DNA of 64,000 nt from Antechinus flavipes. Lineage: Eukaryota. A program made the position numbers and the translations under genes. Location: positions 485,894,001 to 485,958,000 of the forward strand of contig NC_067399.1 of the NCBI RefSeq assembly GCF_016432865.1. Reading direction: 5' to 3'. This document shows, in pieces, positions 1-27,512 of this stretch (positions are counted from its first letter, which is position 1; each line of letters opens with the position of its first letter). The notes under the pieces were generated by a model, which had not been told where the DNA came from, made no database searches, and saw only the letters and a list, made by a program, of their open reading frames with translations.

Positions 1-520
1 TCCAATGATATCCTACTGTAAGAACTGAATCACATCAATCTTGACATTCTCATAACAAACGAAACCAAAAGAGAGTTGAAACTCCAAGGATGGCTCACGA
101 GTTGTCCTTGGAGAAATATATTTAAGTGAATTAGTGAAGATAAAACTGTGGTGCAAAAAAGAAACATAATTTAATGAGATGCTTGGTCACTTTGCATTGC
201 TGTACTTATGATGAAACATTTGTAAACAGACCACCATGGAAATAACTGCCCCTTATGTGCTAATTTATATTGCAAAGGATGAAGAGGTAGAGAAATTCTA
301 TAAAGAACGTGAAATGGTCCTACAAATTAAATTAATGTGTACTTTAATACTTAATTATTTCAATGCAAAGGAGAGCAGATGAGAAGACAGTGAGAAATGT
401 AGTATAAACTTTGGTTGGGAATAAAGAACTAGAGAGACTAAGGATCAACTTATTTACCACAGTACCTGAAACACAGAAAGTACTTGTAGATTCAATTACA
501 TATAATCAAACCATTAACTT
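1..520 (+). mobile_element. Degenerate RTE-clade LINE, endonuclease region
   Basis: Frame from 242 reads ITAPYVLIYIAKDEEVEKFYKE, then LILNYFNAK (cf. the APE-endonuclease LGDFNAK motif); stops and frameshifts elsewhere. Confidence 0.7.
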
Positions 521-599
521 GTTAGAGCAAATAATAGTATAGCTAATAATTATGTAACACTTTAGGATTTAGAAAGTACTTAATTTAGATGGTTTTTTA

Positions 600-1938
600 A
601 AAGCAGACTTTTTTTTTCAGTTTTAAATTATCTTCCTCCCCCATCCAATAAGGCAAGAAAAATAAACCCCATCACAAGTGGGTTTCTGCAAAACAAATTT
701 CTGCACCCCTTCCACCAAAAGAAAACAAAAATAAAACAACCAAACTAAAAAAAAAAAAAGAGAAAAAACACTTCATATTTTACTTTGAGTTCATTAAATC
801 TTTATCTGTGATGTTCAACATGTTTCTTCATTAATCCTTCATAACTGTGGTTAGTTATTGTATTGATCTGAGCTATTAAGTCTTTCAAAATTGTTTATCT
901 TTACAAAGTTGCTGTTACCGTGTGCATTATTCTGGGTCTATTTTATCAGTACATATAAATCTTATCAGGTTTTTCTGAAAGCAGTGGCTTCAACATTTCT
1001 TTTTTTTAATAATCACTTTTTATTTTTCAAAATACATGCAAAGATAGTTTACAACATTCACCCTTGCAAAACCTTGTGTTCAGAGTTTTTCTCCCTCCCT
1101 CCTCACCTCCTCTCTCTCCTAGGCAGCAAGTACATGTGCAATTCTTTTAAACATATTTCTACATTTATCATGCTTCTCCCATCCAATAAGAAGGCAAGAA
1201 AAATAAAACCCACCACAAATATGTATTTGCAAAACAAAGTTCTGTTCCCCTGCTCCACTTTGGAATTGATCTATACGACCTCATTGTTGAAAAGAGCCAA
1301 ATCTATCACATAATCTTGTTGCTGTGCACAATGTTTTTTTTTGGTTCTACTCATTTCACTTAGCCTCAGTTCATGTAAATCTCTCCAGGTCTTTCTGAAA
1401 ACAGCCTACTGATCATTTCTTATGGAAAAGTAATATTCCATTACATTCATATACCATAACTTATTCAGCCATTCCCCAACTGATGAGCATCCACTCAGTT
1501 TCTTAAAACTACAAAAAGGGCTGCTACAAACATTTTTGCATATATGGATCCTTTCCCCATTTTTTATGCTTCATCATTTCTTAAAAAAACAATAGTATGC
1601 CATCACATTCAAATACCATAACTTGTTCAATTATCCTGTAATTCCAATTCTTTGCCATCAAAACAGAATTACAATGAATATTTTTATACTTGTGATCAAA
1701 TTTTTTTTACTTTCATCTCTATAGGGTATAGTTTTTTGGGCATAGTTCCATGTTTTCCTGAATGGTTGGATTAGTGCACAGCTCCTTCAACAATGAATTA
1801 GGGTTATCTGTTGCATATTCTCAAACATTTAGCATTTTCCATTTTTTTTTAATCATCATAGCCAATTTCATGGTGTAAAGTGTTATCTCAGAGTGATTTT
1901 TAGTTGTATTTTTCTATTTATTAGCAATTTAGGGCATC
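600..1938 (-). mobile_element. Old L1 3' fragments (nested 3' UTR and ORF2 end), antisense
   Basis: Marsupial L1 antisense signatures such as ccataacttattcagccattccccaactgatg and gctgctacaaacatttttgca; 3' UTR motif ccatccaataa..ggcaagaaaaataaa occurs twice (about 640 and 1180). Confidence 0.75.
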
Positions 1939-1953
1939 AAAATGCAGCTAATA

Positions 1954-2715
1954 CAATCTGGAATTATGCCCAAAAAGTTATCAAACTGTGCATACCCTTT
2001 GATCCAGCAGTGTTTCTATTGGGCTTATACCCCAAAGAGATACTAAAAAAGGGAAAGGGACCGGTATGTGCCAAAATGTTTGTAGCAGCCCTGTTTGTAG
2101 TGGCTAGAAACTGGAAAATGAATGGATGCCCATCAATTGGAGAATGGCTGGGTAAATTGTGGTATATGAATGTTATGGAATATTATTGCTCTGTAAGGAA
2201 TGACCAGCAGGATGAATACAGAGAGGCTTGGAGAGACCTGCATGGACTGATGCTGAGTGAGATGAGCAGAACCAGGAGATCATTATACACTTCGACAACG
2301 ATATTGTATGAGGATGTGTTCTGATGGAGGTGGATTTCTCTGACAAAGAGACTTAACTGAGTTTCATTGGATGAATGATGGACGGAAACAGCTGCACCCA
2401 GGGAAGGAATACTGGAAAATGAATGTGAACTATTTGATTTTTGATTTTCTTCCCGAGTTATTTTTACCTTCTGAATTCAACTCTCCCTGTGCAGTGGGAG
2501 AACTGTTCGGTTCTGCAGATATGTATTGTATCTAGGATATACTGCTACATATTTAACATATATAGGACTGCTTGCCATCTTGGGGGGGGGGGAGGAGGGA
2601 GGGAGGGGAAAAGACGGAGCATAAGTGATTGCAAGGGATAATGCTGTGTAAAAATTATCCTGGCATGGATTCTGTCAATACAAAGTTATTATTAAATAAA
2701 AAATAAAAATTAAAA
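1954..2715 (+). mobile_element. Young 5'-truncated L1 with intact ORF2 C-terminus, 3' UTR, A-tail and 15-bp TSD
   Basis: ORF 1893-2324 encodes the L1 ORF2 C-terminus (IWNYAQKVIKLCIPFDPAV...GKLWYMNVMEYY...LYEDVF*); G-rich tract and A-tail follow; aaaatgcagctaata at 1939-1953 and 2716-2730. Confidence 0.92.
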
Positions 2716-2759
2716 AAAATGCAGCTAATAATAGCTTTGATTTCTTCTAGTGAAAATTG

Positions 2760-3480
2760 TTCATTCCAGGTAAAGATAATGATAAATGTTGGAAGGAATG
2801 TAGGAAAACTGGGGCATTAATACATTGCTGGTGGAGTTTTGAATTGATCCAATCACTCTGGAAAGCAATTTGAAACTATGCCCAAAGGGTTATAAAACTG
2901 TATATACCCTTTGACCCAGTAGTGTGATTACTGGGTTTGTATCTCAAGGAAATCATAAAGAAAGGAAAAGAATCTATATGTACAAAAATGTTTGTAGCAA
3001 CATTTTTTGTGGTAGCAAAGAATTAGAAAATGAATAGTTGTCCATCAATTGGGAAATAGCTAACAAGTTGTAGTATATGAAGGTAATGGAATATTACTGC
3101 TCTATAAAAAATGATGAACAAATTGATTTTTAGAAATGCCTGGAAAGATTAACATGAACTATTGCTAAATGAAACAAGCAGAACTAGGGATACATGGGTC
3201 ACAATAACAGCAAGAATGTGCAATGATCAACTATGAAAGACTGTTCTTCTCATTGGTCCGGTGATTTAAAGCAATCCCAATAGACTTTGGACAGAAAATA
3301 CCATCTGCATCCCCCCAAAAAACTAAGGAGACTAACTGTAAATTAACATATGCTATGTTCACTTCTTTTTTGTTTTTTTCTCTCTCCCATAGTTTTTCTT
3401 TTTTGCTTTGATTTTTCTCTTCCAATATGATTTACAAAGCAATATGTATTAAAAATAAAAAAATTTACTAGGGAAAAAAA
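2760..3480 (+). mobile_element. Older 5'-truncated L1 (ORF2 end and 3' UTR) nested in the antisense L1
   Basis: Degenerate L1 ORF2 end (tgttggaaggaatgtaggaaaactgggg...aaactatgcccaaagg) ending in an A-rich tail; the host antisense L1 resumes at 3481 (gcccattcatatcttttgaccatt). Confidence 0.8.
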
Positions 3481-6400
3481 TGCCCATTCATATCTTTTGA
3501 CCATTATTAATTGGAGAATGGCTCTAATTTTTTTTGATAGATTATGATATGCATTTTCTTTTAAATTTTTTTATACCTGACTTGCTTATTATTTATCTCC
3601 AATTACATTTAAAACAAAAAAAATTTTCATGTTTTTAAAAAATTTTTTTGAGTTCCAGGTTCTCTCCCTTATCCTCAACCACAATTGAGAAACCACATGT
3701 GAAGTTATGCAAAGCATTTCCATAAAATTCAAGTTGTGAAAGAAAATACAGATCTCCCACCCTAATGAAAAGAAAAACCCTCAAGAAAAATTAAATTGAA
3801 AAAAAAGAAAAAGATGGAAAATGAGAATGCTTCAATTTATATTCAGACACAATCAGTTCCTTCTTTGAGTATAAACAGGATTTTTTATCCTAAGTCCTTC
3901 AGGGTAGTTGTGGATCGTTGTACTGCTGAGAATAGCAGTCATTTACAGCTGGTCATCTCAGAACATTGTAATTAGTTTGTACACAGTACATTTCACTTTG
4001 CTTAAAAGTTCATGAAGGACTTTCCAGTTTTTTTTTTTCCCCTAAGAGGATCCTGCTCATTATTTGAGTGGATCTAATTCTTAAAAAGTTGACTCCTATA
4101 TATTTTAGAAATTAGATCTTTAGAGGCTGCTAGATGGCTCAGTGGCCTGAAAATCAGGAGGCCCTGAAATCAGGAGGACCTGAGTTCAAATGGGGTCTCA
4201 GACACCACTTCCTAACTGTGTGACCCTGGACAAGTCACTTAACTCCAATTGCTTCAGGGGAAAAAAAAGAGAGATCTTTGTAAGAGAAACTTGCTGCAAA
4301 GATTTTCCCCTATTCCCTGTTTTCTTCTAATTTTAGCTGCTTAAATTTTGTTTGTGCAAAAACTCATATTTATATGATCAAAATTATCCATTTTAACTAG
4401 CATGACTTTCTATTTCTTGTTTGGCCATGAGCGAAAATTCCCCCATCAATAGTTTTGAAAGATAATTTCTTCCCTGCTTCACTAATTTGCTTAAGATTTG
4501 CTTGACATCATAAGAAAATGTCTAAATCAAGTACCCACTTTAAGCTCATCTTGGCATACGGTATAAATGTTAGTCGATGTCTAGTTTTTGCCAGGATAAC
4601 TTTCCAGTTTCCCTAATTATTTTTGTCAACCAATAGGTTCTTGCCCAAACAGCTCACTTGGGTTTAATCAATGTTATTTGGTTCATTTGTTTCTACATAG
4701 TATTGTATACCAAATTTGTTCCACTGACAATCCTCTCTATTTCTTGCCCAGTAATTTTACTTTTTGTTTTGATAATTTTAACTTTGTAAAATAATTTGAA
4801 ATCTGGTACTGCTAGAAACCCTTCCTACATAATTTTTATTTTCTATTGACTCTTTGATTTTTTCATGTATATTTGTGACTTTTTGTTCCACTAGATGAAT
4901 TTTGTTATTTTTCTAGCTCTATAGAATAAGTCTTTAATAGTTTGGCATGGTACTGAATAAGTAAATTAATTTAGATAATATTGTCATTTTTATTATACTG
5001 GCCCGGCCTACCATAAGCAATTAATACTTATTCAATTACTTATATCTGTCTTTATTTCTGTGAAGAATGATCTGTATTTGTATTCAACTAGTTTCTATGT
5101 ATATTTGAATAGGTAGACTTTCAAGTATTTGATATTGTCTGTAGTTATTTTAAGTGGAATTTCTCTTTTAGTTGGATACTGCTGGTAATATACAGAAATG
5201 CAGATGATTTGTGTCTGAGAGATCCTGACTATGGTTCCATTGAATTTGAATTCTTTCTTTCTACTTGAATTATTTGCTTCTGGATCCTAGAATTCAGAAT
5301 TTTGGCTATATTTTTTTTTAAGGAGTTTTCATTTTGGGGTTTCCTCCTGGAGTGACTGGTGGATTCTTTTGATTTCTACTTTGTCCTCTGGACTTAAGAT
5401 AACTGGACAGTTTTTCTTTATAATTTCTTGAAACATGTGGATCAGGTTTTTTTTCTTTTGTTCATTGTTTCTAGGTAGTCCAATGATTCTTAAATTATCT
5501 CACCTCAATTTATTTTCTAGGTCAACTATTTTTCTTGTATTTCATATTTTCTCCTATTTTTTCCCCAGCCTTTTAATTTTAGTATTTCCTGATGTCTCCT
5601 GTAATCATCAGTTTATATTTGTTCAATTCCAAATTTTAAGAAGTAATTTTTTAAAAGTAAAGCAATGTTTTGCACCTCTTTTACCATTTGAGCAATTTAG
5701 ATTCATAAGGAGTTATTTTTCCTTAACAATGTTTTATATCTTTTTTTTTGCCATTTAGCTAATTTTGATTTTTAGATATTTATTTTCTTTAGTAATATTT
5801 TGTGTCTCTTTTGAAAAGCTGTTATTCTCTTTTTCATAACTTTCTTTTGGAACTTTAATTTCTTTTCTTATTTTTTCTCTTCCATTTTTATTTGACTTAA
5901 AAAAATATTTTTCGTTCTCCCCCTCTTTTATCTTTTCTATCTGCCAATATTTCGATGACAAAAACCTTTTCTCTATCAATGCTGAGCTTGGGTCCAAGTT
6001 TTTCTGTCATTGTGGTAGTCCTTTATAGTTGGGGCTTTTTGTTTGTTCATTCTCCTGGTCTACTTCTTGACTCTGGATTTTATTTTAGTGTTGGACTCTG
6101 TTTGCTTGTGAGGAAGATGTCTGGTCTAAGTTTCTCTTTTTATATCCTTTTGCTGTTTTGACACCTCAGACTGGCAGCCTACAAATTTTCAATACTTCCA
6201 AGGTAGTTTGATTTGGGGGAGGTCTGTTCACTGCCCTCTTAGTATGAGCTCTGTTAGTTCCTGACCAGTTTGTATCTGTTGGATTGTATGTGGTTGAGTT
6301 TCCAATATTGCTACTATAATCAGTTAATGTTAGCCCACTAGGATGTTCTGTAGGTTGAGAGTAACTAAACTGCTTGACTCCCTTTTGGTATTGGTTTCCT

Positions 6401-6880
6401 GCCTTGGTTATTTCATTGGGACTAAAGGGTAAAGCTAAGTCTTCCTTCTGCTCTTGGGCTCAGAGCCACAAAGCTAAGCTCCATACATAGCTAAGGCTTC
6501 TTTTTTTTTTTTTTTAAATGACTCCTCATCCTTCTCTCTGGCCTGGCATTTGATAAAAGGCAACAGAATGGTCTGTAAACAGGTTCCTGTGCCTAGAGGT
6601 CTAGATTGGGTCTCCTACAATCTCTTTCTTTCCTGATGCTTCGCGTCCTTGAGTTCCTTTACTGTCCTTAGAATGCTAGAATGCTCCTGATTGCCATGAC
6701 TACATTTCTGGTCAGCTGTTGTCCCAGAGTCCTCAAGACCTCTTTATCTTCCTAACTTGCCCTGGGTTGGAAAAAATTACAATTTTTTATTGGTGTTCCC
6801 ATTTGGTGCATTTCCTAGATATTTGTGGAAGTATATCAGCTGAGCTAGACAAAAATGCTGACTCATTTTGCCATCTTGAC
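3481..6880 (-). mobile_element. Degenerate, internally deleted L1 (ORF2 pieces, ORF1 remnant, 5' region)
   Basis: Continuous L1 antisense-like text; ORF 5755-5997(-) is K/E/N-rich like the ORF1 coiled coil. Confidence 0.7.
4123..4270 (+). mobile_element. WSINE1-like short tRNA/CORE SINE
   Basis: gaggctgctagatggctcagtgg...gagttcaaat...aagtcacttaactccaattgcttc plus A-tail; agatcttt on both flanks. Confidence 0.75.
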
Positions 6881-7349
6881 TGCAGCTTTGGACATGAAGT
6901 ATTTTATTTGATTCTCACAAAACTCCTATGAAGTAGGCATTATTATACCCATTTTATAGATGAGGAAATTGAAGCAGAAAAAAGGTAACTTGTTTAGGAT
7001 CACCCAGCTAATAAATACCTGAGGTAGAGTTTGAACTCAAGTCTTTACTCCAAGTCCAAAGCTCAATTTACTATGCCTTCTAGCTGACACAAAGATCAAA
7101 ATCAACATCAAAATAAAAGAATAAAAATTAGAAGATGACATTAGAAGCAGAAATAGCACTAGACATGATATAGTCAAGAGCACTTACTCTAGAAACAGAA
7201 CTTGGGCCCAAATATCATATTTCATATTTCTTATCTAAATCGATTAACTTCTGGAGACTCAGCTTCCTTATTTCTAAAATGAAGATGGCCTAGACTTCAT
7301 CAGAGGTCCCTTACAGTTCTGCATTTATGAAATGGCCTCTAGTTAAGTA

Positions 7350-8180
7350 AACTACAATTAACACCAAAAAATGGATGGGGACAAAAGTAATAGTCTATTA
7401 TCATTTACTAAGGAAGTTTAATCAGTATAAGAAGAATAAGAGACAAGAAACTGCCTCAGCAAGCAAATACTCAATCATTTTGAAAACTGGGGAGTGATAA
7501 GATGCCAAAAGTCACATTAGTTTAGAATATAAATAGATGAGTAATATAAATACGTAGGAGAATGGTAAGAGTATGAGTAGTAGTGCCTCCTTAAAAAAGC
7601 ATGAAGCAAGGGCAATTAGATGGTGCAATGGATAGAGCACAAGTCAGGAAGACCTGAGTTCAAAGCTAGTCTCAGACACTTAACACTTCCTAGCTGTGTG
7701 ACCCTGGATAAGTCACTTAACCCCAACAGCCTCAGCAAGAAAACCAAAACAAACAAAAAACAAAAAACATGAAGCAGTAGAAGGCAAAAATAATTTTATC
7801 GAAAGACTTATAAAAGAATCATTTATGTCAGCTTACCTTTAAGGACATTTAAGGATAAAACTGGAAGAGGGGCAATGAACAAAAAATGTAAAAGACCTAT
7901 AAAAGACTCAATATTTCTATGACAAAAATCTTCTCTATCAATTAAAATGGAGATATAATATTTGGACTCTTAATATCACAGTTCCTGATATGATGTACAA
8001 AGAAACAGAAATAGCACTAGAAAAAAAACAAAAATGAGAAGAACAGTTGGCACAGATCAAGTATATTCGAAATATGTACTGGAGCTAGCAAAATTCTGAT
8101 TATTGAGGGAATCAATTCTCAAAATAACTGAGAGGAGGCTATCAAATAGTTGGAGAAAGTTATAGTCCTAAAAAGGCACA
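7350..8180 (+). mobile_element. Degenerate RTE LINE, middle portion (probable continuation of 1-520)
   Basis: A-rich RTE-like text leading to the RT start (ttggcacagatcaagtata); same orientation as the other RTE pieces. Confidence 0.5.
7609..7762 (+). mobile_element. WSINE1-like SINE with TSD
   Basis: gggcaattagatggtgcaatggatagagcac...ccccaacagcctcagc plus A-tail; aaaaa(g)catgaagca on both sides. Confidence 0.85.
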
Positions 8181-8194
8181 GAGAAAAGAATAGT

Positions 8195-8415
8195 AATTAT
8201 TGAGCACTTATGATTTCTACAAAATGTTTATGAGCTAACATAACATTCTCACTCTTTTTGCTGTTGTTTGTTTGCATTTTGTTTTCTTATTCATTTTCTT
8301 TCCTTGTTGATATGATCTTTCTTGTGCAGCAAGATAATTGTACAAATATGTTTACATGTATTTTAATATGTATAACATATACTGAAAGACTTGTCATCTA
8401 AGGGAGGGGATAACA
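8195..8415 (+). mobile_element. L1 3' UTR fragment
   Basis: ttttcttgtgcagcaagataattgtacaaatatg...gacttgtcatctaagggagggg resembles the UTR at 2440-2600. Confidence 0.65.
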
Positions 8416-8569
8416 TATTGGTTTCATCAAGGTCTAGAACACTTCAAGGGATACTTAAGAATCACAATCATTTCAAAAGTTAGACATAAGTATCCAAAAT
8501 ATGAAACTAAAAAAATCCAAATGTTTGAAGAACGTTTATTATCTAAATCAGAGGTGCAAATCTTGAAGT

Positions 8570-8690
8570 TTTAGGCATAATCTAATTTCATTTTCTTTAT
8601 GTTCACAATTCCACAAATAGGTTATTAACTAGTTAAGGTGCCTGATTTTCTGTAAGTGCCTCAGCTATTTAATTCCTTCATTCAAAAAAT
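8570..8690. repeat. Inverted copy of 13797-13918
   Basis: Manual alignment to the reverse complement: 1 substitution and 1 single-base indel over about 121 bp. Confidence 0.95.
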
Positions 8691-8694
8691 GAAG

Positions 8695-8820
8695 TCATCT
8701 AATGACTCCCTTTAAGCTGCTTTCTTTATGCAATTTTCCCCCCATTTTAATAAAACTGGTAACAATTTTATTAAATAAACCAATTTTATAGATAGAATAA
8801 AAATGTAATACACATAGATA
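8695..8820. repeat. Inverted copy of 10166-10293
   Basis: Manual alignment to the reverse complement: 7 substitutions and 2 indels (1 and 3 nt) over about 127 bp. Confidence 0.95.
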
Positions 8821-8965
8821 GTGTCTTGAACTGCACTGAAATGTAACTGGGAAATGTTTAAACAAAAAATAAATAAAATGTAACATAGATATTGTTAATT
8901 TGTGGTTTTCTAGTTAATATGCAGCCAGCAGGGATCGTTTCTATTTGAGTTTGACATTACTGATT
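8821..8965. mobile_element. hAT-type non-autonomous DNA transposon fragment (marsupial MITE)
   Basis: gttaatttgtggttttcta...atttgagtttgaca; an opposite-orientation relative lies at about 20978-21140. Confidence 0.6.
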
Positions 8966-9349
8966 TAGACTATGATATGCAATTGGTTTAACAACCCATA
9001 GATCTTGCCCATTAAATATATGTGTATGTGTGTGTGTGTGTGTACATGTACATGTATCTCAAATATATGTAATACATATACATTCTTGGATTGATATGGT
9101 AGATAGACGAAGCCCTGGGCCTTGAACTGAACAGACTAATGGTAGTGGGTTAAGATTACTTATGGGAAATTAGGAAGTGCTTCTAAGATGCTTCAGCTTT
9201 TGACTGAAACAAAGGCCTATTAAATACTATATGTCTGCAGGGTCAAGAAGATTGATAAAGATTTAAAGTTATAAATAACTAGGCAATGAAGTGGTGAATA
9301 TGAATAGGCTGTAACATATTCTTAAGAACGGTTCAACAATTTGAAACTA

Positions 9350-10075
9350 TGTCCTACAAGATACTAAATTGTGTATGATCTTTGACCCAGCTATATCACT
9401 ATTATTTGTATAATCAATATAAGAAAAAAGACATATATGTACACAAATATTTAGAGCAGCTTTTTACTAGAACTAAGGGTATCTCCTCCTATTGAAAGAT
9501 GGTTAAAAAAAAAACCTGGCATATAAATGTAACAGAATATATTACATTCCTTTAAGAAATGAAAAAAATAGGGGCAATTGGATGGCTTAGTAGAGCACCA
9601 TTCTGAAATGAGAAGGATCCGAGTTCAAATCTGTCCTCAGACATTTGCTAGCTGTGGGACTCTAGGCAAGTCACTTAATCCTTCCATTTCCAAGAAATGA
9701 CAAAAAAGGAGAGTTTCAGAGAAAATTGGAAGATCTCTGTGAACTAATACAGAGCAAAGTGAAGAGAATTAGAATAATCTATACAGCGAAAACAATATTA
9801 CAGAGAAAAAACAATATTGAAAGAATTTAGAAGTTCCATCAACTCAACGATAAACCATAAAACCACAAAAGCCTCCTGCCACAGAGGTGATGAATTTAAA
9901 ATGTAGAGACTTACATTTACATTACATGGCCAATGTGGGAATTTGCTTTGCCAGATTATGCAGTTATATATTCATTTGTTATTTCCTCAATGGAATAAAG
10001 GAGTAGTGGGAGGGACAGATTAATAAAAGAAAAAGAAAAAAGAGATATGCAATTAAAAAGAGAATTATAAGCAGC
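9350..10075 (+). mobile_element. Old L1 3' fragment interrupted by a SINE (about 9570-9690)
   Basis: caatttgaaactatgtcc...tttgacccagc (ORF2 end) followed by an L1 3' UTR and A-rich tail. Confidence 0.65.
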
Positions 10076-10244
10076 AATGTCGTCAAAGATAACACATTTT
10101 GAGAAACTTTATACCCAAAAAAAGTCCTTTCAACTTATTATTATAATGATTATTTTTGTTATAAATATCTATGTATATTACATTATTTTTATTTTATCTA
10201 TAAAATTGGTCTATATAATAAAATTGTTACCAATTTTATTAAAA

Positions 10245-10520
10245 TGGGGAAAAAATTGCATAAAGAAAGCAGCTTAAAGGAGTCATTAGATGAATGACGA
10301 AAAAGGAAATGATTTGGTCAAGTAATAAGAGAAAATAGGTAACAGATGATCAGCTTTTCTGCTTTGTTAGCATTTGTACAACACAAGCAACCAGAAGACA
10401 GTCCCCCAGACATTAGGTAGACGCCAAGTAGAAGGCTCATGAGAAGATACAGACTTGAGTTACATCAGATGAAACACTGACAAAGGCCATCACCATTTAA
10501 TAAAGAAGTTTAATTGATTA
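10245..10520 (+). mobile_element. RTE LINE 3' end
   Basis: Resembles the RTE C-terminal RWAGHVAR..DNRWT..GRPP..W region (gaaaaaggaaatgatttggtcaag...gtaacagatgatcagc...cccccagacattaggtagac). Confidence 0.55.
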
Positions 10521-11649
10521 AGAAGACAAAAAGATGTGGAATGACAGAGACTGTGATTTGTATGGTTAGAGAAAATAGCCATATCAATGATGGCATAGTT
10601 CCATTAAAGTTTTAAAACATAAAATTGTCCAATTTCATGTACAAATCAGTTAAAAAAGCCCAAAAAGATATATTAAAACACATTTCTTACACTTTATTTA
10701 TATCATAAAAATAAAATATAATTAAAGCCAAAAATAAGGAATGTGACAAGAGAAAGGAGACCAAAAAGAAAAGAGTATGAGACAATTGTCTTAAAAAAAA
10801 AAAAGGCAGAAAAATAATAAATTACATAAATCCTTCACAGAAGTTCTATCCATGGTTAGAGTCTTTTCAGCATCCCAGGAATAGTAAGGATAGTACTTGG
10901 GCTGTTCATCTGTTATCCTTCACATTATATACTTAATTCCTCCACAAAAGTCCAACTCTGATTTCTCTTTAAAAGGCTACCCTGAGTTCTTGAAGGCTAA
11001 GCCAATTGAGTAATAGATCTGGCAGCTTTTTCGAAGTTGAAAAAGTTTCTAGAATGGTTGTCATGACAATTTATATCTGTTAAGGATCAACCTTATTATA
11101 TATGGATAAACTCATCACTTGTAAGTTGGCCACTAGGTGATGAAATATTTATCCATAGCAACCCATTAAAACAAAGAAAAAATCCCAAAAGGTCCTTAGT
11201 ATTAAATATCCCCTTTCTATTTCAATCATGATTAAAAAGGAACAAAGGATTATACTGATACTTGCCATAAAGGAAATCAGAAAACAAAAAGAACTTGAAG
11301 CCAATGGAAGATGGATCAAAACTTTTTTTTTTCCTAGTAGCTTTTTCATTTATACTCTGCTTCTCTGTGACCACATATGGGTTTTCCTGGTATTAAGTAT
11401 TAAGAGTGGTTGGCTCCAGTATGTCCCCATTTACAGTTGAAGAACTGAGAAAAATAGAGGTTTAAATGACTTGTCCAGGGTCATATATCTAGTAAGTATA
11501 TGAAACAGGATTTAAACACAGGAATGGCTCTTCCTCATTCTTAGCCCAATGTTCTATCCACTTCACATCTACCTTCTCCAAAAGTTCTTAGAAGCAAATA
11601 AAGAAATCCTAGAATCACATATGCAAAATTAAGAGAGACAAGATATGGA

Positions 11650-11880
11650 AGCAGCTAGGTGGTATAGTATTTAGAGCACTGATCCTGGAATCAGTAAGAT
11701 CCCAGCTTAAATCTGGCCTCAGGCACTTACAAGCTGTGTGATCCTGGGCAAATCACTGAACCCCTATTGCTTCAGTTCCTCATCAGCAAAATGGGGACAT
11801 AGGAAAAAGAGAATGGCAAAGTACTCTGGTATTTTTGCCAAGGAAACCACACGGATTACATCCACTGGACACAAATGAAT
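11650..11880 (+). mobile_element. MAR1-type CORE SINE
   Basis: gcagctaggtggtatagt...CORE (agctgtgtgatcctgggcaaatcac)...BovB-like tail (gaatggcaaagtactctggtatttttgccaaggaaacc). Confidence 0.8.
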
Positions 11881-12259
11881 AAGAATAAGATACAGATGAA
11901 GAGATTCAGAAAAGTTGAGGGATTTACCAAAGGTCACAAAGGTCCTAAGCATCCTAGGTGAAATTTGAACTTAGGTCCTTTAAACCTAGAATACTGTGCT
12001 CTTTCCTTTGCACCAGAGTTGAATTCATTATTCAATCAAACCACAACAATTAGGGAAATCACACGGATTACATCCACTGGACACAAATGAATAAGATACA
12101 GATGAAGAGATTCAGAAAAATTGAGGAATTTACCAAAGGTCACAAAGGTCCTAAGCATCCTAGGTGAAATTTGAACTTAGGTCCTTTAAACTTAGAATAC
12201 TGTGCTCTTTCCTTTGCACCAGAATTGAATTCATTATTCAATCAGACCACAACAATTAG
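11842..12259. repeat. Tandem duplication, 212 bp + 206 bp
   Basis: Copies 11842-12053 and 12054-12259 differ by 6 substitutions and one 6-bp indel (aataag). Confidence 0.95.
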
Positions 12260-12316
12260 TTTTCTAGAATGTGTACTCAACTTGCTTTGCAGTTCTCATG
12301 ATAAAGAACTGTGTAT

Positions 12317-12485
12317 GGGTACATCTAGGTAGCGCAGTGGATAGAGCACCAGTCCTGAAGTCAGGAGGACCTGAGTCCAAATCTGACTTCAGACACTTTA
12401 ACATCGCTTAGCTGTGTGACCATGGGCAAGTCACTTAACCCCAATTGCCTCAGCAGGAAAAAAAGAAAAAAAAAAAAAAAAAAAA
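12317..12485 (+). mobile_element. WSINE1-like SINE
   Basis: gggtacatctaggtagcgcagtggatagagcaccag...ccccaattgcctcagc plus long A-tail; aaaga(a/g)ctgtg on both flanks. Confidence 0.85.
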
Positions 12486-12759
12486 GAGCTGTGATTGCCC
12501 TTTGATCCAATAGTATTCCTGATAAAGATAACTGTAACATATGTCCTAATGTATTACAAAAGAAGTTCCTGATGGAGAACTTCAACAAAGAACACAATGA
12601 GATCCTTCAAACAGAGTCAACACATGACATAATTTAAGGCAAAAAAAAGGCATAGGAATACAATGAAAAGTTCATTAGAGATGCTATTAAGGGGGAAAAA
12701 AAGACTAACTACTAAGAAACCTCAGAACTATATTTGTAATAACTTATTAAATATAAGAG

Positions 12760-12985
12760 GCAACCAGTTAGAACAGTGGATAAAGTGCTGGGCTTGGAGT
12801 CAGAAGACCTGAGTTCAAATTCAGCCTCTGAAACTCATTAGCTGTGCAATGTTGGGTAAGTTAATTAATCAGTTTGCCACTTGGGAAGAAATGGTAAACT
12901 ACTGGTATCTTTGCTAAAAAAAACTCCATGCACAGAAGTCTTCAGGGTGACAAAGAATGGGATATGACTGAAACAACTGAATGAC
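12760..12985 (+). mobile_element. MAR1-type CORE SINE
   Basis: tRNA-like head, CORE and tail gatatgactgaaacaactga. Confidence 0.75.
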
Positions 12986-13975
12986 ATTAACTGCAAAGAA
13001 TAAAAAAAGGTGTTTTTTTTTTTTTTTTTTGCTGGAGTTATCAATTAAAACTTTTAATTTGTCCTCAATTCAGTAACAATTTAATGACTCTAAATATTGA
13101 GATGATATAACCAAATCATGATCTATTATGCTAGAAACTACTAAACAGTTATTAAAAAGGAAAACTATGAAGATTGTCTTTAAGTGGAAATATAAGTGAA
13201 ATGATTTAAAATGGAAAACAATTCTGACAATACTATAAGAGCATGCTTTATAACAGATAAAACCTGAACTAGTAATCTGGTGAACTAGATTCTAATGCTA
13301 GCAACGTCACTACTTATGTCACCTTGGACAAACTATTTTACTCTAAGAGTCACTATCGTCAGCTCTCAAATGAGGGGATTTGACAGGATCTCAAAAGTTA
13401 TTTTCTGTTCCATGATCTTTATCCTTGTGGCACTCTAAACAAAAGAGGAGAAAGATGGAAAAGGTGATCGATTTAGATTTCAGGGAACCTGGGTTTCAAC
13501 TTGAGCTCAGCTACTACATGCTTGATCTTGGATAAATCACTTAAGATCAGTTTCTTCATGAGCAAATGACAAGGTTGGACTAAGTAAAAGTTAGGTCTCT
13601 TCCATTCTAAATATATGTTAATAACTATTTGAATGAAATTTGAAGTGTTATGAAATCTATTAATTAGATTTTTTTCATGGAGATATAACATTGCTTAAGC
13701 TCATAATGAAAAAGTTAATTTAAATTTTTACTTCAGAATACAAATTGTAACTTTTTTTTTAGCAACAAAAGGAGTTTCAATTGATCAAGACCTGTAATTT
13801 TTTGAATGAAGGAATTAAATAGCTGAGGCACTTACAGAAAATCAGGCATCTTAACTAGTTAATAACCTATTTGTGGAATTGTGAACATAAAGAAAATGAA
13901 ATTAGATTAGTGCCTAAAGAACTGCGATTTGCAAACTACAAGTTTTCCACTTTGCAAGCTTTTAAAGACACTTAC

Positions 13976-14184
13976 CTTTACTCTTCTTCGTTTTTTTTCC
14001 TTTTCTTCCCCTGGGACCTGCTTTTCTCCTTTCTTCCTCTTTTTTCTCTTTCTGTCTTTATGTTTCTCATGATCTGTTTTGTCATCAAAGAGGCTTGAAT
14101 CATGTCCTGAACTGCCTGTGGAGAGCTCTGTGACTTCATTTCCTCCTACTTTCAGTACTAACTTCAAAGGTTTTTCCACATACT
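13976..14184 (-). CDS. BRD7: BRD7 exon 2 (209 nt), basic NLS-rich N-terminal region
   Basis: (E)YVEKPLKLVLKVGGNEVTELSTGSSGHDSSLFDDKTDHEKHKDRKRKKRKKGEKQVPGEEKEKKRRRVK matches my recollection of mammalian BRD7; polypyrimidine tract and AG acceptor at 14186-14185; GTAAGT donor starting 13975; 49+209 nt = 86 codons, in frame. Confidence 0.97.
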
Positions 14185-15544
14185 CTTAAAAAAGAAAAAA
14201 AAGGAATGAAACAAGATTAAAACAAAACTCCAAGCCTCTTAAGAATGAAACTAGATGCATTAAAAATATAATTTGGGGTACTGTGGCCATTCTTCTAGGC
14301 AGTTTGATGAAGTCTAAGGTTTGATATAAATAGTAAAATAATTTCTGTATCTATATACATCAAAGGGTAGAGACCTGATTAAAATTATTTTGATAACATA
14401 CAAAATGATCAGTGAACCAAATGTATGCCAGTGAAATGAAAGAGTCTTTCCCAAGTTTTGAACTGGTTTATCTTTGGGGGACTGGAAAACTAACACCAAC
14501 TTACTGTTACTAATAAAACCTGGCTATCATTTTTGAGATTATTTTATTAAATTCAAAAATATTCACTGAGCTGTAATAGTTACAGGAGCATAACGAGAAA
14601 GACAAAAGGATTTAGAGACAGAAGACCTGGGTTACAGGCCTTGTTCTACTGGCTGTATTTTGAACATGAATGGGCAAATCACTTGACTTCTCGAAGGCCT
14701 CAGTTTTCCCTCCTGTAAAACAGGGATAACCACACTTCTGAGCTCTTCCTTGCAGGGTTGCTATGCTACAAAACATTATAGAAACATGACCCATAATTAC
14801 TGGGACTACTTCAGCCATATCCAGTAAGGCCCCAGAAACCCAAACACACCTTCCCAAGGTGCTATCCTTCCTCCCTCCACTCAGTCCCGCCGTGTCAGAT
14901 TCATCCCCATCTCCTTCCCTCCTCCCCGAAAGCTAATCTATATCCTTTTAGACCTCAACTTGATTCGGTTCAACGTTTATTAAGAAACTTTTACAAGTTT
15001 GCTAGGAACAGAGGGGTGGGGGTGGGGGTGACAAACACCGGAACAACAGCAGCTCCGGCTTTTCATACACTTGGGGGGGGGGGGGGAGAGAAAGAGAGGG
15101 AGTAGGGGGAGGGACTTTTCCCCAGTCAATAACCTCCCCTCTGGGCCGTCTCCCCTCCTGTCAGACCTTCCCCCCCCAGGCCGTCACGTCAGATCCACCG
15201 GTCGAAAGTTCTCCTCAGTCCCCCGTTCCTCTCTCTCACTCAAATTCAATCCTGTTCTTTTCCACAAGCATTTATTTAGCATCTACGAGGTGCCAGACGC
15301 TGGGAATACCAAAACAAAAGAAACCATTCCTGCCCTCAGGGAGCTTCCAGTCCTTTTTCGCAGCGTCTCCTCATTCCCTTTCTCTTCCTCCGAGGCCTCC
15401 CGCCCTTGGACTCTAGTCCCCTCAGTTCCCCGATCTCCTTAGTCTCTAGGGGCGCCTTGGGTTCCCCTCCTCCTCCCATCCTCCGCCCTCTTCGGTTTCC
15501 CGCCCGGCTCCCTCAGGGCCCGCGGCCGCGGCCGGGCCGCTCAC

Positions 15545-15593
15545 CCTCATAGAGGTGCTTGTCTGACTTGTGCTTCTTATGCTTCTTGCCCAT
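15545..15593 (-). CDS. BRD7: BRD7 exon 1 coding part (49 nt)
   Basis: ATG in strong context (gccgacATGG) reads MGKKHKKHKSDKHLYE+G; GTGAGC donor starting 15544; 1360-nt intron 1; phase fits exon 2. Confidence 0.97.
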
Positions 15594-15979
15594 GTCGGCC
15601 CGGGCCCCGGTGCCCGCCCCCCGCGCCAGGCCCAGGCCGCACCGCTTCCGGCCCGGGGAGCGAAGCCCCGGAGCCGGAGGGAACGAGGGAGGGACGGAGG
15701 GAGCGAGCGAAAGAGCGAGCGAGAACGAGGCCGGAGATCCGGAGGAGCCAGCGAGACGACGAGCGGGGAGAGCCAGCTAGCAGGGGCAGAGAGGGAGGGC
15801 CCGTTCAGCGCGCTGAGGGTCGGGGCGTTGCGTCACATCGCCCTCTCGCGTCCGGAGGTCGCGCTGCAGCCTGCGCCTCTGTACATCAGACAAGCGGGCG
15901 CTGCTGGGTATGACTGGGCAGAGCACAGGAGGAGGATGCAACCCCAGAAGCAGAAAAACTCAGGAAAAAAAGAGGCAGC

Positions 15980-16046
15980 GAGAGACACACACACGCACAC
16001 ACAGACACAGAGACAGAGAGAGGGAGACAGAGACACACGGAGAGAG
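15980..16046. repeat. Compound (GA)n/(CA)n microsatellite in the promoter
   Basis: agagacacacacacgcacacacagacacagagacagagagagggagacagagacacacggagagag. Confidence 0.85.
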
Positions 16047-18945
16047 ACCTCCATTTCATTAAGAGTTTGCAGCTTTAAATGGGTACCGGACCCAGGTTCC
16101 GGCTCGTCCCGGCGAGTGTGGGAGGCCGCGGGTCCCCGCGCCGCCCGTCCCGGCGTCTGAGGGCGGCTGCACCGCTGCCTTGGTAAGGGAGTGCCTCAGG
16201 GCAGTTCCTCACACGGGCAGGGCGCGTTGGTGTGCCTTCCTCTGTGCCGGGCGCGCAGAGTCAGACAAGGAGGCACGTCCTTCTCTGAAGGGTCTCCCAG
16301 TGAGTGGGGGGGCAGCATGAACTACAGACAGACAAGATCTGTTCAGGATAAGCTGCAGGTAATCAGCTAAGGGCAGAAGTAGGGTCTGGACCCCAAGCAA
16401 TAAGACTAATGAAATCCTTTGAGGAAGGGGGAAAGGCCCTGGAAAATGATTGTTCTGTTCATAGGTACAAAATCCCCATGTGGTTTGTGTCTCAGCCAAA
16501 TCAGCTTGATTTCAGAAGATTATCGGGGATTATCATTATCACCTGATAGACTATTAGATCTGGAAAGGGCCTTAGAGACTTTCTAGTCAAATCCTCCTCT
16601 TTCATTGATGAGGGCCCTGAGGCCCAGCAAAGGGAAATTATTTGCTGCGCTGCTTAGGGTCAAGACTGGCTGGGCCAGAATCCTGCTATCCTGAATGCTT
16701 CCCATGGGCTCTGTCATTTGGACCCAATACTGACTCTTACTATTATTTGTACAATTCAGACTAAGCTCTTTGTGATACTTGCCTCTTTTATCCCTACCTC
16801 TCCTTATTCCATCTTAATTTTGAAGACAGAAAACCAATGCCAGAGAAATGAAAATATTTGCTCAGGGTCCTACAGTAAAATAAGCATCTAGGTGGCCTAG
16901 TGTATAGAATGCTGGATTTGGAATCAGGAAGACCTGACTTCAAATTCTGCTCCACTCTTATTAGTTGTGTGACGCTGAGCATGGTATGGAGACTTAGTTT
17001 CCTCATCTGTAAAATGGGAATATAATCCTTACTTTGTAGAATCAAGTGAGATAATATATGTAAAGGATTTTGCAAACTTCAAAGTACTTGATATTATTAG
17101 AGGTAGAATTAAGATGTGAACTCAGCTCTCCTGATACTCAGACCAATCCCCTTTCTACTTAGATCCCACAACCTGAAAAATGCTCTGATTTATATTTTTC
17201 CTGCATTCATATTGTTCTACTTATCATTGATAATGCTGCTCCTCTTTCTGCTTTTATTGATTAATTACATATATGTAGTACTTCTTGATCTAGCTTATAA
17301 CTATTTGATCCTCAAAACAACCCCATAGAGTAAGCAGGGGGGGAATTGTTACCCTCACTTTTCAGCTAGGAAGCTCAGACACAGACAAGTGAAATGGTTA
17401 GTAGGAGGTTACATAGTAAGTTCTAATAGTAATGTCATTAGTGTACAGAATGGCCAAATTGTGGTGGTGGTATTTTTTTTGTTGTTGTTGTTATTTTTTT
17501 AACTCTTGGTTTCAGAAAAGCTGGGGTCTGTTGAGCTGGTCTAAAGGAATTGTCACCAATATTACCAGCCTGTCCTTGGCTCTGGTAAAAAAGGATACAG
17601 GAGAAAATTATTGTGGGGTAGCATGTCCTTCAGCTATGTTTCCATAGCAACCTGGAGATGTAACCCAGGTGGAGCATTTGGGTTCAGGAAAAAAGGCCTC
17701 TGTTTGTTGGCTTTTATAGAAAAGAAGGGAAAAAATTAGATGAAATCTTGTTCTCTTCTTCTTCTTCATTAATTACTCATTGAAGAAATTTATAAGGGAA
17801 AATATTTTCCAGAAGGCTTATATTTGGTGGTGAGTATTTCTCAGGCTTACATACATGTTTCTTGGGATTCCATGGATAGGAAGGAGAAGAATATGAGTAG
17901 CTGCAAGGTAGTTGAAAACCAGAACCTGGAGATGGGATTGGGGGAGCAGATAGTGTGTTAATTGAAGAGCAGGTTGGGGATGGTCATCCCAAAGGAAGGG
18001 ACAGATACTCCCCAGAGAGGAATATAAAGTAGATTTTATCAGGTTCCAATAATTGTTTTTCTCTATTTTACTACATAACACTGAAAGATATTTCACCAGA
18101 ACCAAAGTTATCTATAAATCTGCACTAAGCTACCATTTTTGCTTTGTGGAGAAGATCCAAAGCCATAATTGTTCTTCACACTTCTGAAGGGAGTAGTCCA
18201 TTAGCTGAGTGGATACTAGAGTCTGGAATGGCCCTATTTAATAATTATAAAATTGGCAAAGTTTATCCTTGACATTTATGGCAGAAGGGTAAGCTCCCCC
18301 TTCCCTATACCTCAGGGCTATTGTGATATCAAGGCACTTACTATCAGAATTTAAATCTCATTAATTAATTTACACTGAGGCCTTAGGGATTTTGTATAAC
18401 CTTTCCTAGGGATACTTGTATTTCATAGGATCATGGACCTAAAGCTAGAATGGATCTTCCAGGTCATCTAGTTCAGCACTGATTTTTACAAATGAGGGAA
18501 CTGAATCCCAGAGAAGTAAACAGTTTGCTCAAAATCACTCTGGACTTTAGGTACTGTGACTTCAAGAAAGACTTTAGTACTCTTTCTACAGGGCCATACT
18601 GTCTCTCCAGGGAGGGTAATGCCAAAGCAATGAATTTTGAATATCAGAACTTCAGGTACTATAGTACCCAGAATAGGGGAGAGGGTAGGATATATGGGAT
18701 CAGGAATAATCCTCCCAGAATTTCTCAAATACCATGTTTGGTAATTATCTAATGTAGACATTGTCCTTGGTTTGGGAATAATTAATTTTTTTTTTTTTTT
18801 TAGTTTGGCTAATGGTCCCCAGTTAAATTTTATTTTATTTTCAGTTCCAAATTTCCTCTCTCTCCCTCCCCCACCCTTAGCCATTGAGAAGGTAAGAAAA
18901 ACAAAGCCCATTACAAGTGAAATTCTCTTTATTACCTGTGTTGAC

Positions 18946-27327: not shown

Positions 27328-27512
27328 NNNNNNNNNNNNNNNNNNNNNNNNNNNNNNNNNNNNNNNNNNNNNNNNNNNNNNNNNNNNNNNNNNNNNNNNN
27401 NNNNNNNNNNNNNNNNNNNNNNNNNNNNNNNNNNNNNNNNNNNNNNNNNNNNNNNNNNNNNNNNNNNNNNNNNNNNNNNNNNNNNNNNNNNNNNNNNNNN
27501 NNNNNNNNNNNN
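27328..27512. other. Assembly gap (185 N)
   Basis: N run, preceded by a TTTC-rich tract. Confidence 1.

What the first reader, a model, noticed from the sequence alone, without database searches (positions are those of the whole stretch)
8570..13918. Near-perfect 121-bp inverted copy of the sequence just after the BRD7 exon-2 donor, 5 kb into intron 2
Seen: 8570-8690 is the reverse complement of 13797-13918 with one substitution and one 1-nt indel. The source starts 57 nt downstream of the exon-2 GT donor and is not a recognisable repeat family. Established: long intronic inverted repeats can form pre-mRNA duplexes that are ADAR substrates and can alter splicing. Inference: the BRD7 pre-mRNA could fold a roughly 120-bp near-perfect stem beside the donor, looping out about 5.1 kb, which would be a lineage-specific RNA-structure element in a tumour-suppressor gene.
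Basis: partly seen in the sequence, partly recalled or inferred. Interest (0 to 1): 0.72.

Follow-up and report, generated by a model that had tools for sequence, protein, structure and literature searches.

The report
Two-piece inverted copy in BRD7 intron
The 121-base inverted copy is in the sequence, but it is half of a 254-base patch stitched from two backwards copies of the same intron, most likely a DNA copying or repair scar that could fold the BRD7 pre-mRNA into long double strands, with no evidence yet that it does anything.

Summary
Window 8570-8690 is the reverse complement of 13797-13918 with one substitution and one 1-nt indel. It is the most similar repeat pair in the 64 kb.

It does not stand alone. 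It abuts a second inverted copy: 8696-8820 is the reverse complement of 10166-10293, with 8 substitutions and 2 indels.

The 254-nt patch (8570-8823) is bracketed and split by three copies of one target motif:
- TCTTGAAGT at 8561-8569
- TGAAGT at 8690-8695
- TCTTGAACT at 8824-8832

An 8-nt in-register match (TGCAAATC) lies just outside the left junction.

This anatomy fits a local inverted templated insertion, made by iterative template switching or fold-back break repair. That is a known kind of mutation, and earlier unchecked notes of this scan list several similar cases in this genome.

In the minus-strand pre-mRNA the arms give nested stems of -188 and -165 kcal/mol. Function, editing, age and independent read support could not be tested:

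Verdict: probably a real but ordinary mutational scar, of moderate to low interest.

The parts
13976..14184 (-). BRD7-type exon 2 (69 codons, YVEKPLKLVLKVGGNEV...RRRVK); donor GT at 13975-13974
   Evidence: Translation. Best database hits are unnamed ORFs with the same N-terminal exon. A weaker tier includes one named BRD9. The name BRD7 rests on my recall of the human protein.
13797..13918 (-). Source arm B, intron 2 positions +58 to +179
10166..10293 (-). Source arm A, intron 2 positions about +3683 to +3810
8555..8562 (+). TGCAAATC: 8-nt match, in register, with the flank of source B (rc 13926-13933), separated from the copy by 7 unmatched nt on both sides; candidate microhomology anchor
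   Evidence: P about 0.001 for an in-register run of 8 or more within 30 nt.
8561..8569 (+). Target motif copy 1, TCTTGAAGT, abutting the left end of the patch
8570..8689 (+). B' : inverted copy of 13798-13918 (the finding's distal arm), 1 substitution, 1 indel
8690..8695 (+). Target motif copy 2, TGAAGT (the '4-nt linker' of note s1-208990 is part of it)
   Evidence: A 6-mer shared by the 12 nt on either side of B' has P about 0.02 at any offset, and less for exact abutment.
8696..8820 (+). A' : inverted copy of 10166-10293, 8 substitutions, 2 indels
8821..8823 (+). GTG, untemplated filler between A' and the right motif copy
8824..8832 (+). Target motif copy 3, TCTTGAACT (8 of 9 identical to copy 1), abutting the right end of the patch
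   Evidence: P about 0.006.

Best explanation
Window 8570-8823 is a 254-nt insertion made of two reverse-complement copies of sequence from the same intron. B' comes from 5.1 kb away and A' from 1.3 kb away. It arose at the DNA level when a growing 3' end left its template at the motif TCTTGAAGT. That end copied the opposite strand of nearby DNA, came back to the same motif, left again, and finally resumed. This is iterative template switching of the FoSTeS/MMBIR kind, or fold-back synthesis during break repair. I put about 65-70% on one multi-switch event. The remaining 30-35% goes to two successive insertions: A' first with a 9-bp target duplication, then B' with a 6-bp duplication at the base of the A'/A repeat. 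The sources were left intact. A by-product is a nested palindrome, with order B' A' ... A ... B on the plus strand. In the minus-strand pre-mRNA the order is 5' B ... A ... A' B' 3'. It can therefore form an inner stem of about 125 bp and an outer stem of 120 bp starting 58 nt after the exon-2 donor. Shown here: the sequence anatomy and the thermodynamic potential. Inferred: the mechanism, neutrality, and that the duplex forms in cells.
For: There are two adjacent inverted copies of two separate parts of the same intron, in nested order, with both sources intact. The target motif occurs three times exactly at the piece boundaries; simulated P is 0.02, 0.007 and 0.006. An in-register 8-nt match lies outside the left junction, P about 0.001. 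There is a 3-nt untemplated filler. No other copy of either piece exists in 64 kb. There is no Rfam family. No assembly gap lies between positions 1 and 27327. The arms differ by a substitution and an indel, so they are not a trivially duplicated assembly block. Published work describes inverted templated insertions at breaks, including two-piece inverted insertions from one locus (PMC11724301). It also describes template switches that create inverted repeats able to form RNA hairpins (PMC5453318; PMC8794818). Unchecked earlier notes report several similar young inverted copies elsewhere in this genome. Cofold energies are -188 kcal/mol (B:B') and -165.5 (A:A'), against about -40 for shuffled partners.
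Against: No outgroup or read evidence was obtained, so the derived state, the age and even the correctness of the assembly are unproven. The two pieces differ in divergence: 1/120 against 8/126 substitutions, Fisher p = 0.036. This sits awkwardly with a single faithful event. Microhomology at three of the four junctions is only 1-4 nt. The 8-nt anchor is internal: 7 unpaired nt follow it, which is not the textbook geometry. Templating from RNA (the intron transcript) instead of DNA gives the same product and cannot be excluded.
Confidence: 0.72

Rival explanations
1. RNA-templated patch: a piece of the BRD7 intron-2 transcript was reverse transcribed and used to fill a break, or was inserted by a LINE enzyme (templated sequence insertion, class 1 or 2).
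For: Both pieces read on the plus strand in pre-mRNA sense and in the pre-mRNA's 5'-to-3' order, B then A. B' ends in a run of six A. Target duplications of 5 bp or more are a class 1 feature (PMC5110952). The nascent transcript is physically close to its own gene.
Against: The A6 run is in the source itself, so no non-templated poly(A) was added. B' has no AATAAA on the relevant strand. The target CT/TGAAGT does not match the TTTT/A preference. The B-to-A junction has no GT-AG, so it is not a spliced RNA. Class 2 insertions lack target duplications.
Confidence: 0.1
2. Assembly artefact: the patch was created by chimeric reads or mis-polishing and is not in the animal's genome.
For: Near-perfect inverted copies are a known product of some library artefacts. 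Many such copies have been noted in this one assembly.
Against: The patch is small and internal to a gap-free stretch. It is flanked by target-site duplications and a microhomology anchor that artefacts do not make. Its arms carry substitutions. Runs of organism A from another study hold 69-84% of the sampled words of 8300-13950, though this is not resolved by position. Unchecked earlier notes say similar copies in this genome are shared with related species.
Confidence: 0.07
3. The arms are two insertions of a young short mobile element (for example a 5'-truncated LINE tail or SINE-like unit ending in A6) that happen to lie inverted in one intron.
For: B' is flanked by an exact 6-bp direct repeat and ends in A6. 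No repeat library for this genome was available.
Against: The proximal copy has no convincing target duplication (5 of 7 at best). The flank beyond the copy shares an in-register 8-mer with the source flank. A second, unrelated pair (A/A') shows the same nested inverted geometry at the same site. No further copies exist in 64 kb although the window holds several SINE and LINE relics.
Confidence: 0.05
4. Selected RNA-structure element: the nested stems are maintained because they regulate BRD7 exon 2-3 splicing, editing or small-RNA production.
For: The predicted duplexes are very stable. The outer stem starts 58 nt from the donor. Five of seven transition differences would still pair as G-U in the pre-mRNA sense, but the binomial p is about 0.23.
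Against: High identity is explained by youth. The arms are AT-rich, non-coding and of ordinary composition. The same kind of copy recurs in unrelated introns of this genome. Intronic duplexes are removed with the intron, and large loops lower the chance of pairing (PMC12695637).
Confidence: 0.04

Closest known systems
Template-switch mutations that create inverted repeats (four-point model; Loytynoja and Goldman 2017, PMC5453318; Monttinen and Loytynoja 2022, PMC8794818)
   Same: A stretch is copied in reverse complement from nearby DNA, the source is kept, and a new inverted repeat able to form an RNA hairpin appears in one step.
   Different: Those events are short-range, with single switch-and-return fragments found from about 14 bp up. 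The authors explicitly do not model long-range or multiple rounds. Here the pieces are 120 and 125 nt, the templates are 1.3 and 5.1 kb away, and there are at least two rounds.
FoSTeS/MMBIR and fold-back templated insertions at breaks (for example Yu et al. 2024, PMC11724301; Osia et al. 2021, PMC8421209)
   Same: Iterative switching with microhomology and filler bases. The yeast study calls two-piece insertions from one locus in inverted orientation 'common' among complex insertions.
   Different: This is a fixed or segregating germline event in a marsupial intron, not an experimental or tumour junction. The repeated return to one 9-nt motif leaves three motif copies. The 8-nt anchor lies 7 nt inside the 3' end.
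Templated sequence insertion polymorphisms, class 1 and class 2 (Onozawa and Aplan 2016, PMC5110952)
   Same: A non-repeat genomic fragment is pasted into another site. There is a target duplication of 5 bp or more (class 1 trait), and filler and microhomology (class 2 traits).
   Different: The templates are local rather than distant. There is no added poly(A), no poly(A) signal and no TTTT/A site. The insert has two pieces and is inverted relative to its sources.
Intronic inverted-repeat dsRNA edited by ADAR (inverted Alu pairs)
   Same: Two inverted arms of more than 100 nt lie in one intron and can pair as RNA.
   Different: The arms are unique sequence, not SINEs, and are far more similar (99% and 92-94%) than typical repeat pairs. 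The outer loop is 5.1 kb. Editing was not tested.

Membership tests
Local inverted templated insertion (template switching / fold-back repair) | The inserted DNA is the reverse complement of nearby sequence on the same molecule, and the source is retained | tested here: met
Local inverted templated insertion (template switching / fold-back repair) | Microhomology and/or short filler at the switch points | tested here: inconclusive
   There is an 8-nt in-register anchor at the left junction (P about 0.001), a CAAA..T partial match at the return, a 1-nt match at the third junction, and GTG filler at the fourth. The anchor is internal, not terminal.
Local inverted templated insertion (template switching / fold-back repair) | Derived state: an empty site in outgroups or other individuals | not testable with these tools
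An ORF proxy search was blank.
Class 1 templated sequence insertion (LINE-1 ORF2-mediated) | Target-site duplication of at least 5 bp | tested here: met
   6-bp TGAAGT around B' and a 9-bp motif (8 of 9) around the whole patch. Definition from PMC5110952.
Class 1 templated sequence insertion (LINE-1 ORF2-mediated) | Non-templated poly(A) of 10-40 nt preceded by a poly(A) signal | tested here: not met
   Only the A6 already present in the source. No AATAAA or ATTAAA in B' on that strand.
Class 1 templated sequence insertion (LINE-1 ORF2-mediated) | Insertion at a TTTT/A-like site | tested here: not met
   The target reads ...AAATCT/TGAAGT on the plus strand.
ADAR-edited intronic inverted-repeat dsRNA | Two inverted arms in one transcript able to form a long duplex | tested here: met
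   Both arms lie in intron 2 on the gene strand. Cofold energies are -188 and -165.5 kcal/mol.
ADAR-edited intronic inverted-repeat dsRNA | Clusters of A-to-G mismatches in RNA over both arms | not testable with these tools
The RNA runs listed belong to a distant organism F.
Interspersed repeat family | Many dispersed copies in the genome | tested here: inconclusive
   Exactly two copies of each piece in 64 kb and no Rfam match. No whole-genome or Dfam search was available.

The most novel reading that the evidence does not exclude
One mutational event gave the BRD7 pre-mRNA of this marsupial lineage a nested double-stranded structure of about 245 bp beginning 58 nt after the exon-2 donor. It forms in vivo, is hyper-edited, and measurably changes exon 2-3 splicing or yields small RNAs. 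That would be a regulatory RNA structure born whole from a template-switch error. A weaker, separate possibility is that the many similar copies noted in this genome reflect an unusually active long-range template-switch process in this lineage.
Probability: 0.05. Interest if true: 0.6.

Novelty: new member of a known kind. Interest (0 to 1): 0.3.

Why it matters
If real, this is a clean natural record of iterative template switching. It has two inverted pieces, three copies of the site the polymerase kept returning to, and an anchor match. It shows how one error can create a long RNA duplex next to a splice donor in a chromatin-regulator gene. It gives a concrete locus for testing whether such new duplexes are edited or affect splicing. 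Together with similar loci in this genome, it could help measure how often long-range inverted templated insertions arise in marsupial germlines. On present evidence it is a neutral scar.

Tried and rejected
No read, contig, dating or editing evidence resulted. The local composition table did span them.

3. I used a 63-aa ORF across the A'/right-flank junction as a proxy to find relatives' contigs. It had no hit, which is uninformative.

4. The protein-atlas search on the exon-2 peptide gave no usable hit.

5. I searched exon 2 alone, by reference.

6. Splicing as the origin of the B-A junction was rejected: no GT-AG on either strand.

7. A DNA transposon with 125-nt terminal inverted repeats (8696-10293) was rejected: no matching target duplication at its ends.

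8. I looked for exon 3 in 1-8570 and found none.

9. I did not scan the metagenome collection for the junction. A marsupial host contig there is very unlikely, and a blank would mean nothing.
Full report
**Observation**

The repeat finder reports inverted arms 8578-8690 and 13797-13909, 113 nt at 99%. Alignment extends the match to 8570-8689/8690 against 13797-13918: 119 identical positions, one substitution and one 1-nt indel. Every other inverted pair is 72-94% and looks like old interspersed repeats. No N run lies between positions 1 and 27327.

**Gene context**

The minus strand of 13976-14184 translates without stops to a 69-residue peptide. Its best database matches are unnamed ORFs carrying the same exon. 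One of them, P0001, continues into the next exon in the way I recall for BRD7. A clearly weaker tier includes a protein named BRD9. So this is the BRD7-type paralogue. The name itself rests on my memory of the human protein.

I searched exon 2 alone, by reference, and did not join exons. A start-codon peptide (MGKKHKK) lies at 15573-15593 on the minus strand, inside a GC-rich island. The donor GT is 13975-13974, so the source arm begins at intron position +58. I found no exon 3 in 1-8570, so intron 2 is at least 13.9 kb and the distal arm is not close to the acceptor.

**The copy is half of a composite**

Immediately to the right of the distal arm lies a second inverted copy. Window 8696-8820 is the reverse complement of 10166-10293, with 8 substitutions and 2 indels.

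On the plus strand the order is B' A' - 1.34 kb - A - 3.5 kb - B, a nested palindrome. Both sources are intact.

Reading the junctions, the patch is organised around one target motif:
- TCTTGAAGT at 8561-8569
- B' at 8570-8689
- TGAAGT at 8690-8695
- A' at 8696-8820
- GTG at 8821-8823
- TCTTGAACT at 8824-8832

In addition, TGCAAATC at 8555-8562 matches the flank of source B in register, with 7 unmatched bases between it and the copy on both sides.

I drew random pairs from the same intron to estimate chance probabilities:

| Feature | Simulated P |
|---|---|
| 6-mer shared by the sequence on either side of B' | about 0.02 |
| 7-mer / 9-mer-with-one-mismatch bracket around the patch | about 0.007 / 0.006 |
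| In-register 8-mer | about 0.001 |

Together these are not chance.

**Mechanism**

The anatomy is what copy-and-return DNA synthesis leaves. A 3' end departs at the motif, copies the complementary strand of nearby DNA, and returns a few bases upstream of where it left. That return duplicates part of the motif. The end then departs again and finally resumes. This corresponds to FoSTeS/MMBIR-type iterative switching, or to fold-back synthesis on a resected end.

Published support:
- A yeast study documents fold-back inverted insertions at breaks. It states that, among complex insertions, two sequences from one locus in inverted orientation are common (PMC11724301).
- Template switches that create inverted repeats and RNA hairpins are described for primate genomes. 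Those events are at short range and in single rounds (PMC5453318; PMC8794818).

Alternatively, two ordinary insertions happened in sequence: A' first with a 9-bp duplication, then B' with a 6-bp duplication inside the left copy of that duplication.
- The unequal divergence favours two events. It is 0.8% for B/B' (95% CI 0.02-4.6%) against 6.3% for A/A' (2.7-12.5%), Fisher p = 0.036.
- The extreme coincidence of two hits within a few bases favours one event. The exception would be if the base of the A'/A repeat is a fragile site.

I lean towards one event, at about two to one. The excess changes in A' would then be due to chance, to its 21% GC low-complexity sequence, or to error-prone synthesis.

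**Rivals**

- *RNA-templated patch.* It gives the same product. Both pieces are in pre-mRNA sense and order, and B' ends in A6. However, the A6 is genomic, there is no added poly(A), no poly(A) signal and no TTTT/A site. The class 1 definition is therefore not met, and class 2 insertions lack target duplications (PMC5110952). The B-A junction has no splice signals.
- *Mobile-element origin.* It is unlikely because of the flank match, the missing duplication at the proximal copy, and the second, unrelated pair with the same geometry. Only a whole-genome search can settle it.
- *Assembly artefact.* It is unlikely because of the target duplications, the substitutions between arms and the gap-free context. 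It is not excluded.

**RNA potential**

As minus-strand RNA, the predicted energies are:

| Pairing | Energy (kcal/mol) |
|---|---|
| B with B' | -188 |
| A with A' | -165.5 |
| Shuffled partners | about -40 |
| Each arm folded alone | about -15 to -23 |

The inner stem has a 1.3-kb loop and would bring B' next to A. The outer stem must still close over 3.5 kb. From established knowledge, such duplexes are ADAR substrates. Published data indicate that intronic duplexes are removed with the intron and that larger loops lower the chance of pairing (PMC12695637). Rfam has no family here. Nothing indicates selection: five of seven transition differences would remain G-U pairs in the gene sense, which is not significant.

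**Age and spread**

The look-up of sequencing runs lists organisms A to F holding 84% down to 15% of the sampled 31-mers of 8300-13950. If all the loss were substitutions, this would mean at most about 0.6% to 6% divergence. Arm divergences of 0.8-6% fall in the same range, so the relatives listed would bracket the event. I kept those places out of every later search.

**Context from this scan**

These are unchecked AI notes. Other notes name the genome as the yellow-footed antechinus. They list several other young inverted local copies, and their follow-ups judged them template-switch scars, some shared with related species. I did not test those claims. If true, they lower the prior for a BRD7-specific function and for a one-off artefact.

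**Verdict**

This is a new member of a known kind of mutation, with an unusually legible junction record. Interest is 0.3.

Noticed in passing
window 11842-12259: A 206-nt unit in two tandem copies, 94% alike, inside the 3.5-kb stretch between the two source arms. It is a second young local duplication in the same intron.
   Followed up: partly
window 15000-16500: GC-rich island (57-69% GC) holding the minus-strand start peptide MGKKHKK at 15573-15593. Presumably the promoter and exon 1 of the same gene.
   Followed up: no
window 9613-9693, 11695-11775, 12803-12868, 13483-13559: Diverged copies (64-86%) of one SINE-like unit, all in the same orientation within intron 2.
   Followed up: no
window 5100-6000 (minus strand) and 1342-3115: Stop-free stretches that look like LINE-1 protein relics, and inverted 80-85% repeats that look like old LINE tails, further down the intron.
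   Followed up: no
window 8696-8820 versus 10166-10293: Four of the eight substitutions are C in the copy against T in the reverse-complemented source, and six of the eight are transitions. Without an outgroup the direction is unknown.
   Followed up: partly
window 27328-27512 and 60623-60760: Two runs of N (185 and 138 bases), far from the finding. Left untouched.
   Followed up: no
genome-wide (earlier notes): The scan's notebook lists at least eight other near-perfect inverted local copies of 76-263 bp in introns of this assembly. A count per megabase against other marsupials would show whether this lineage is unusual.
   Followed up: no
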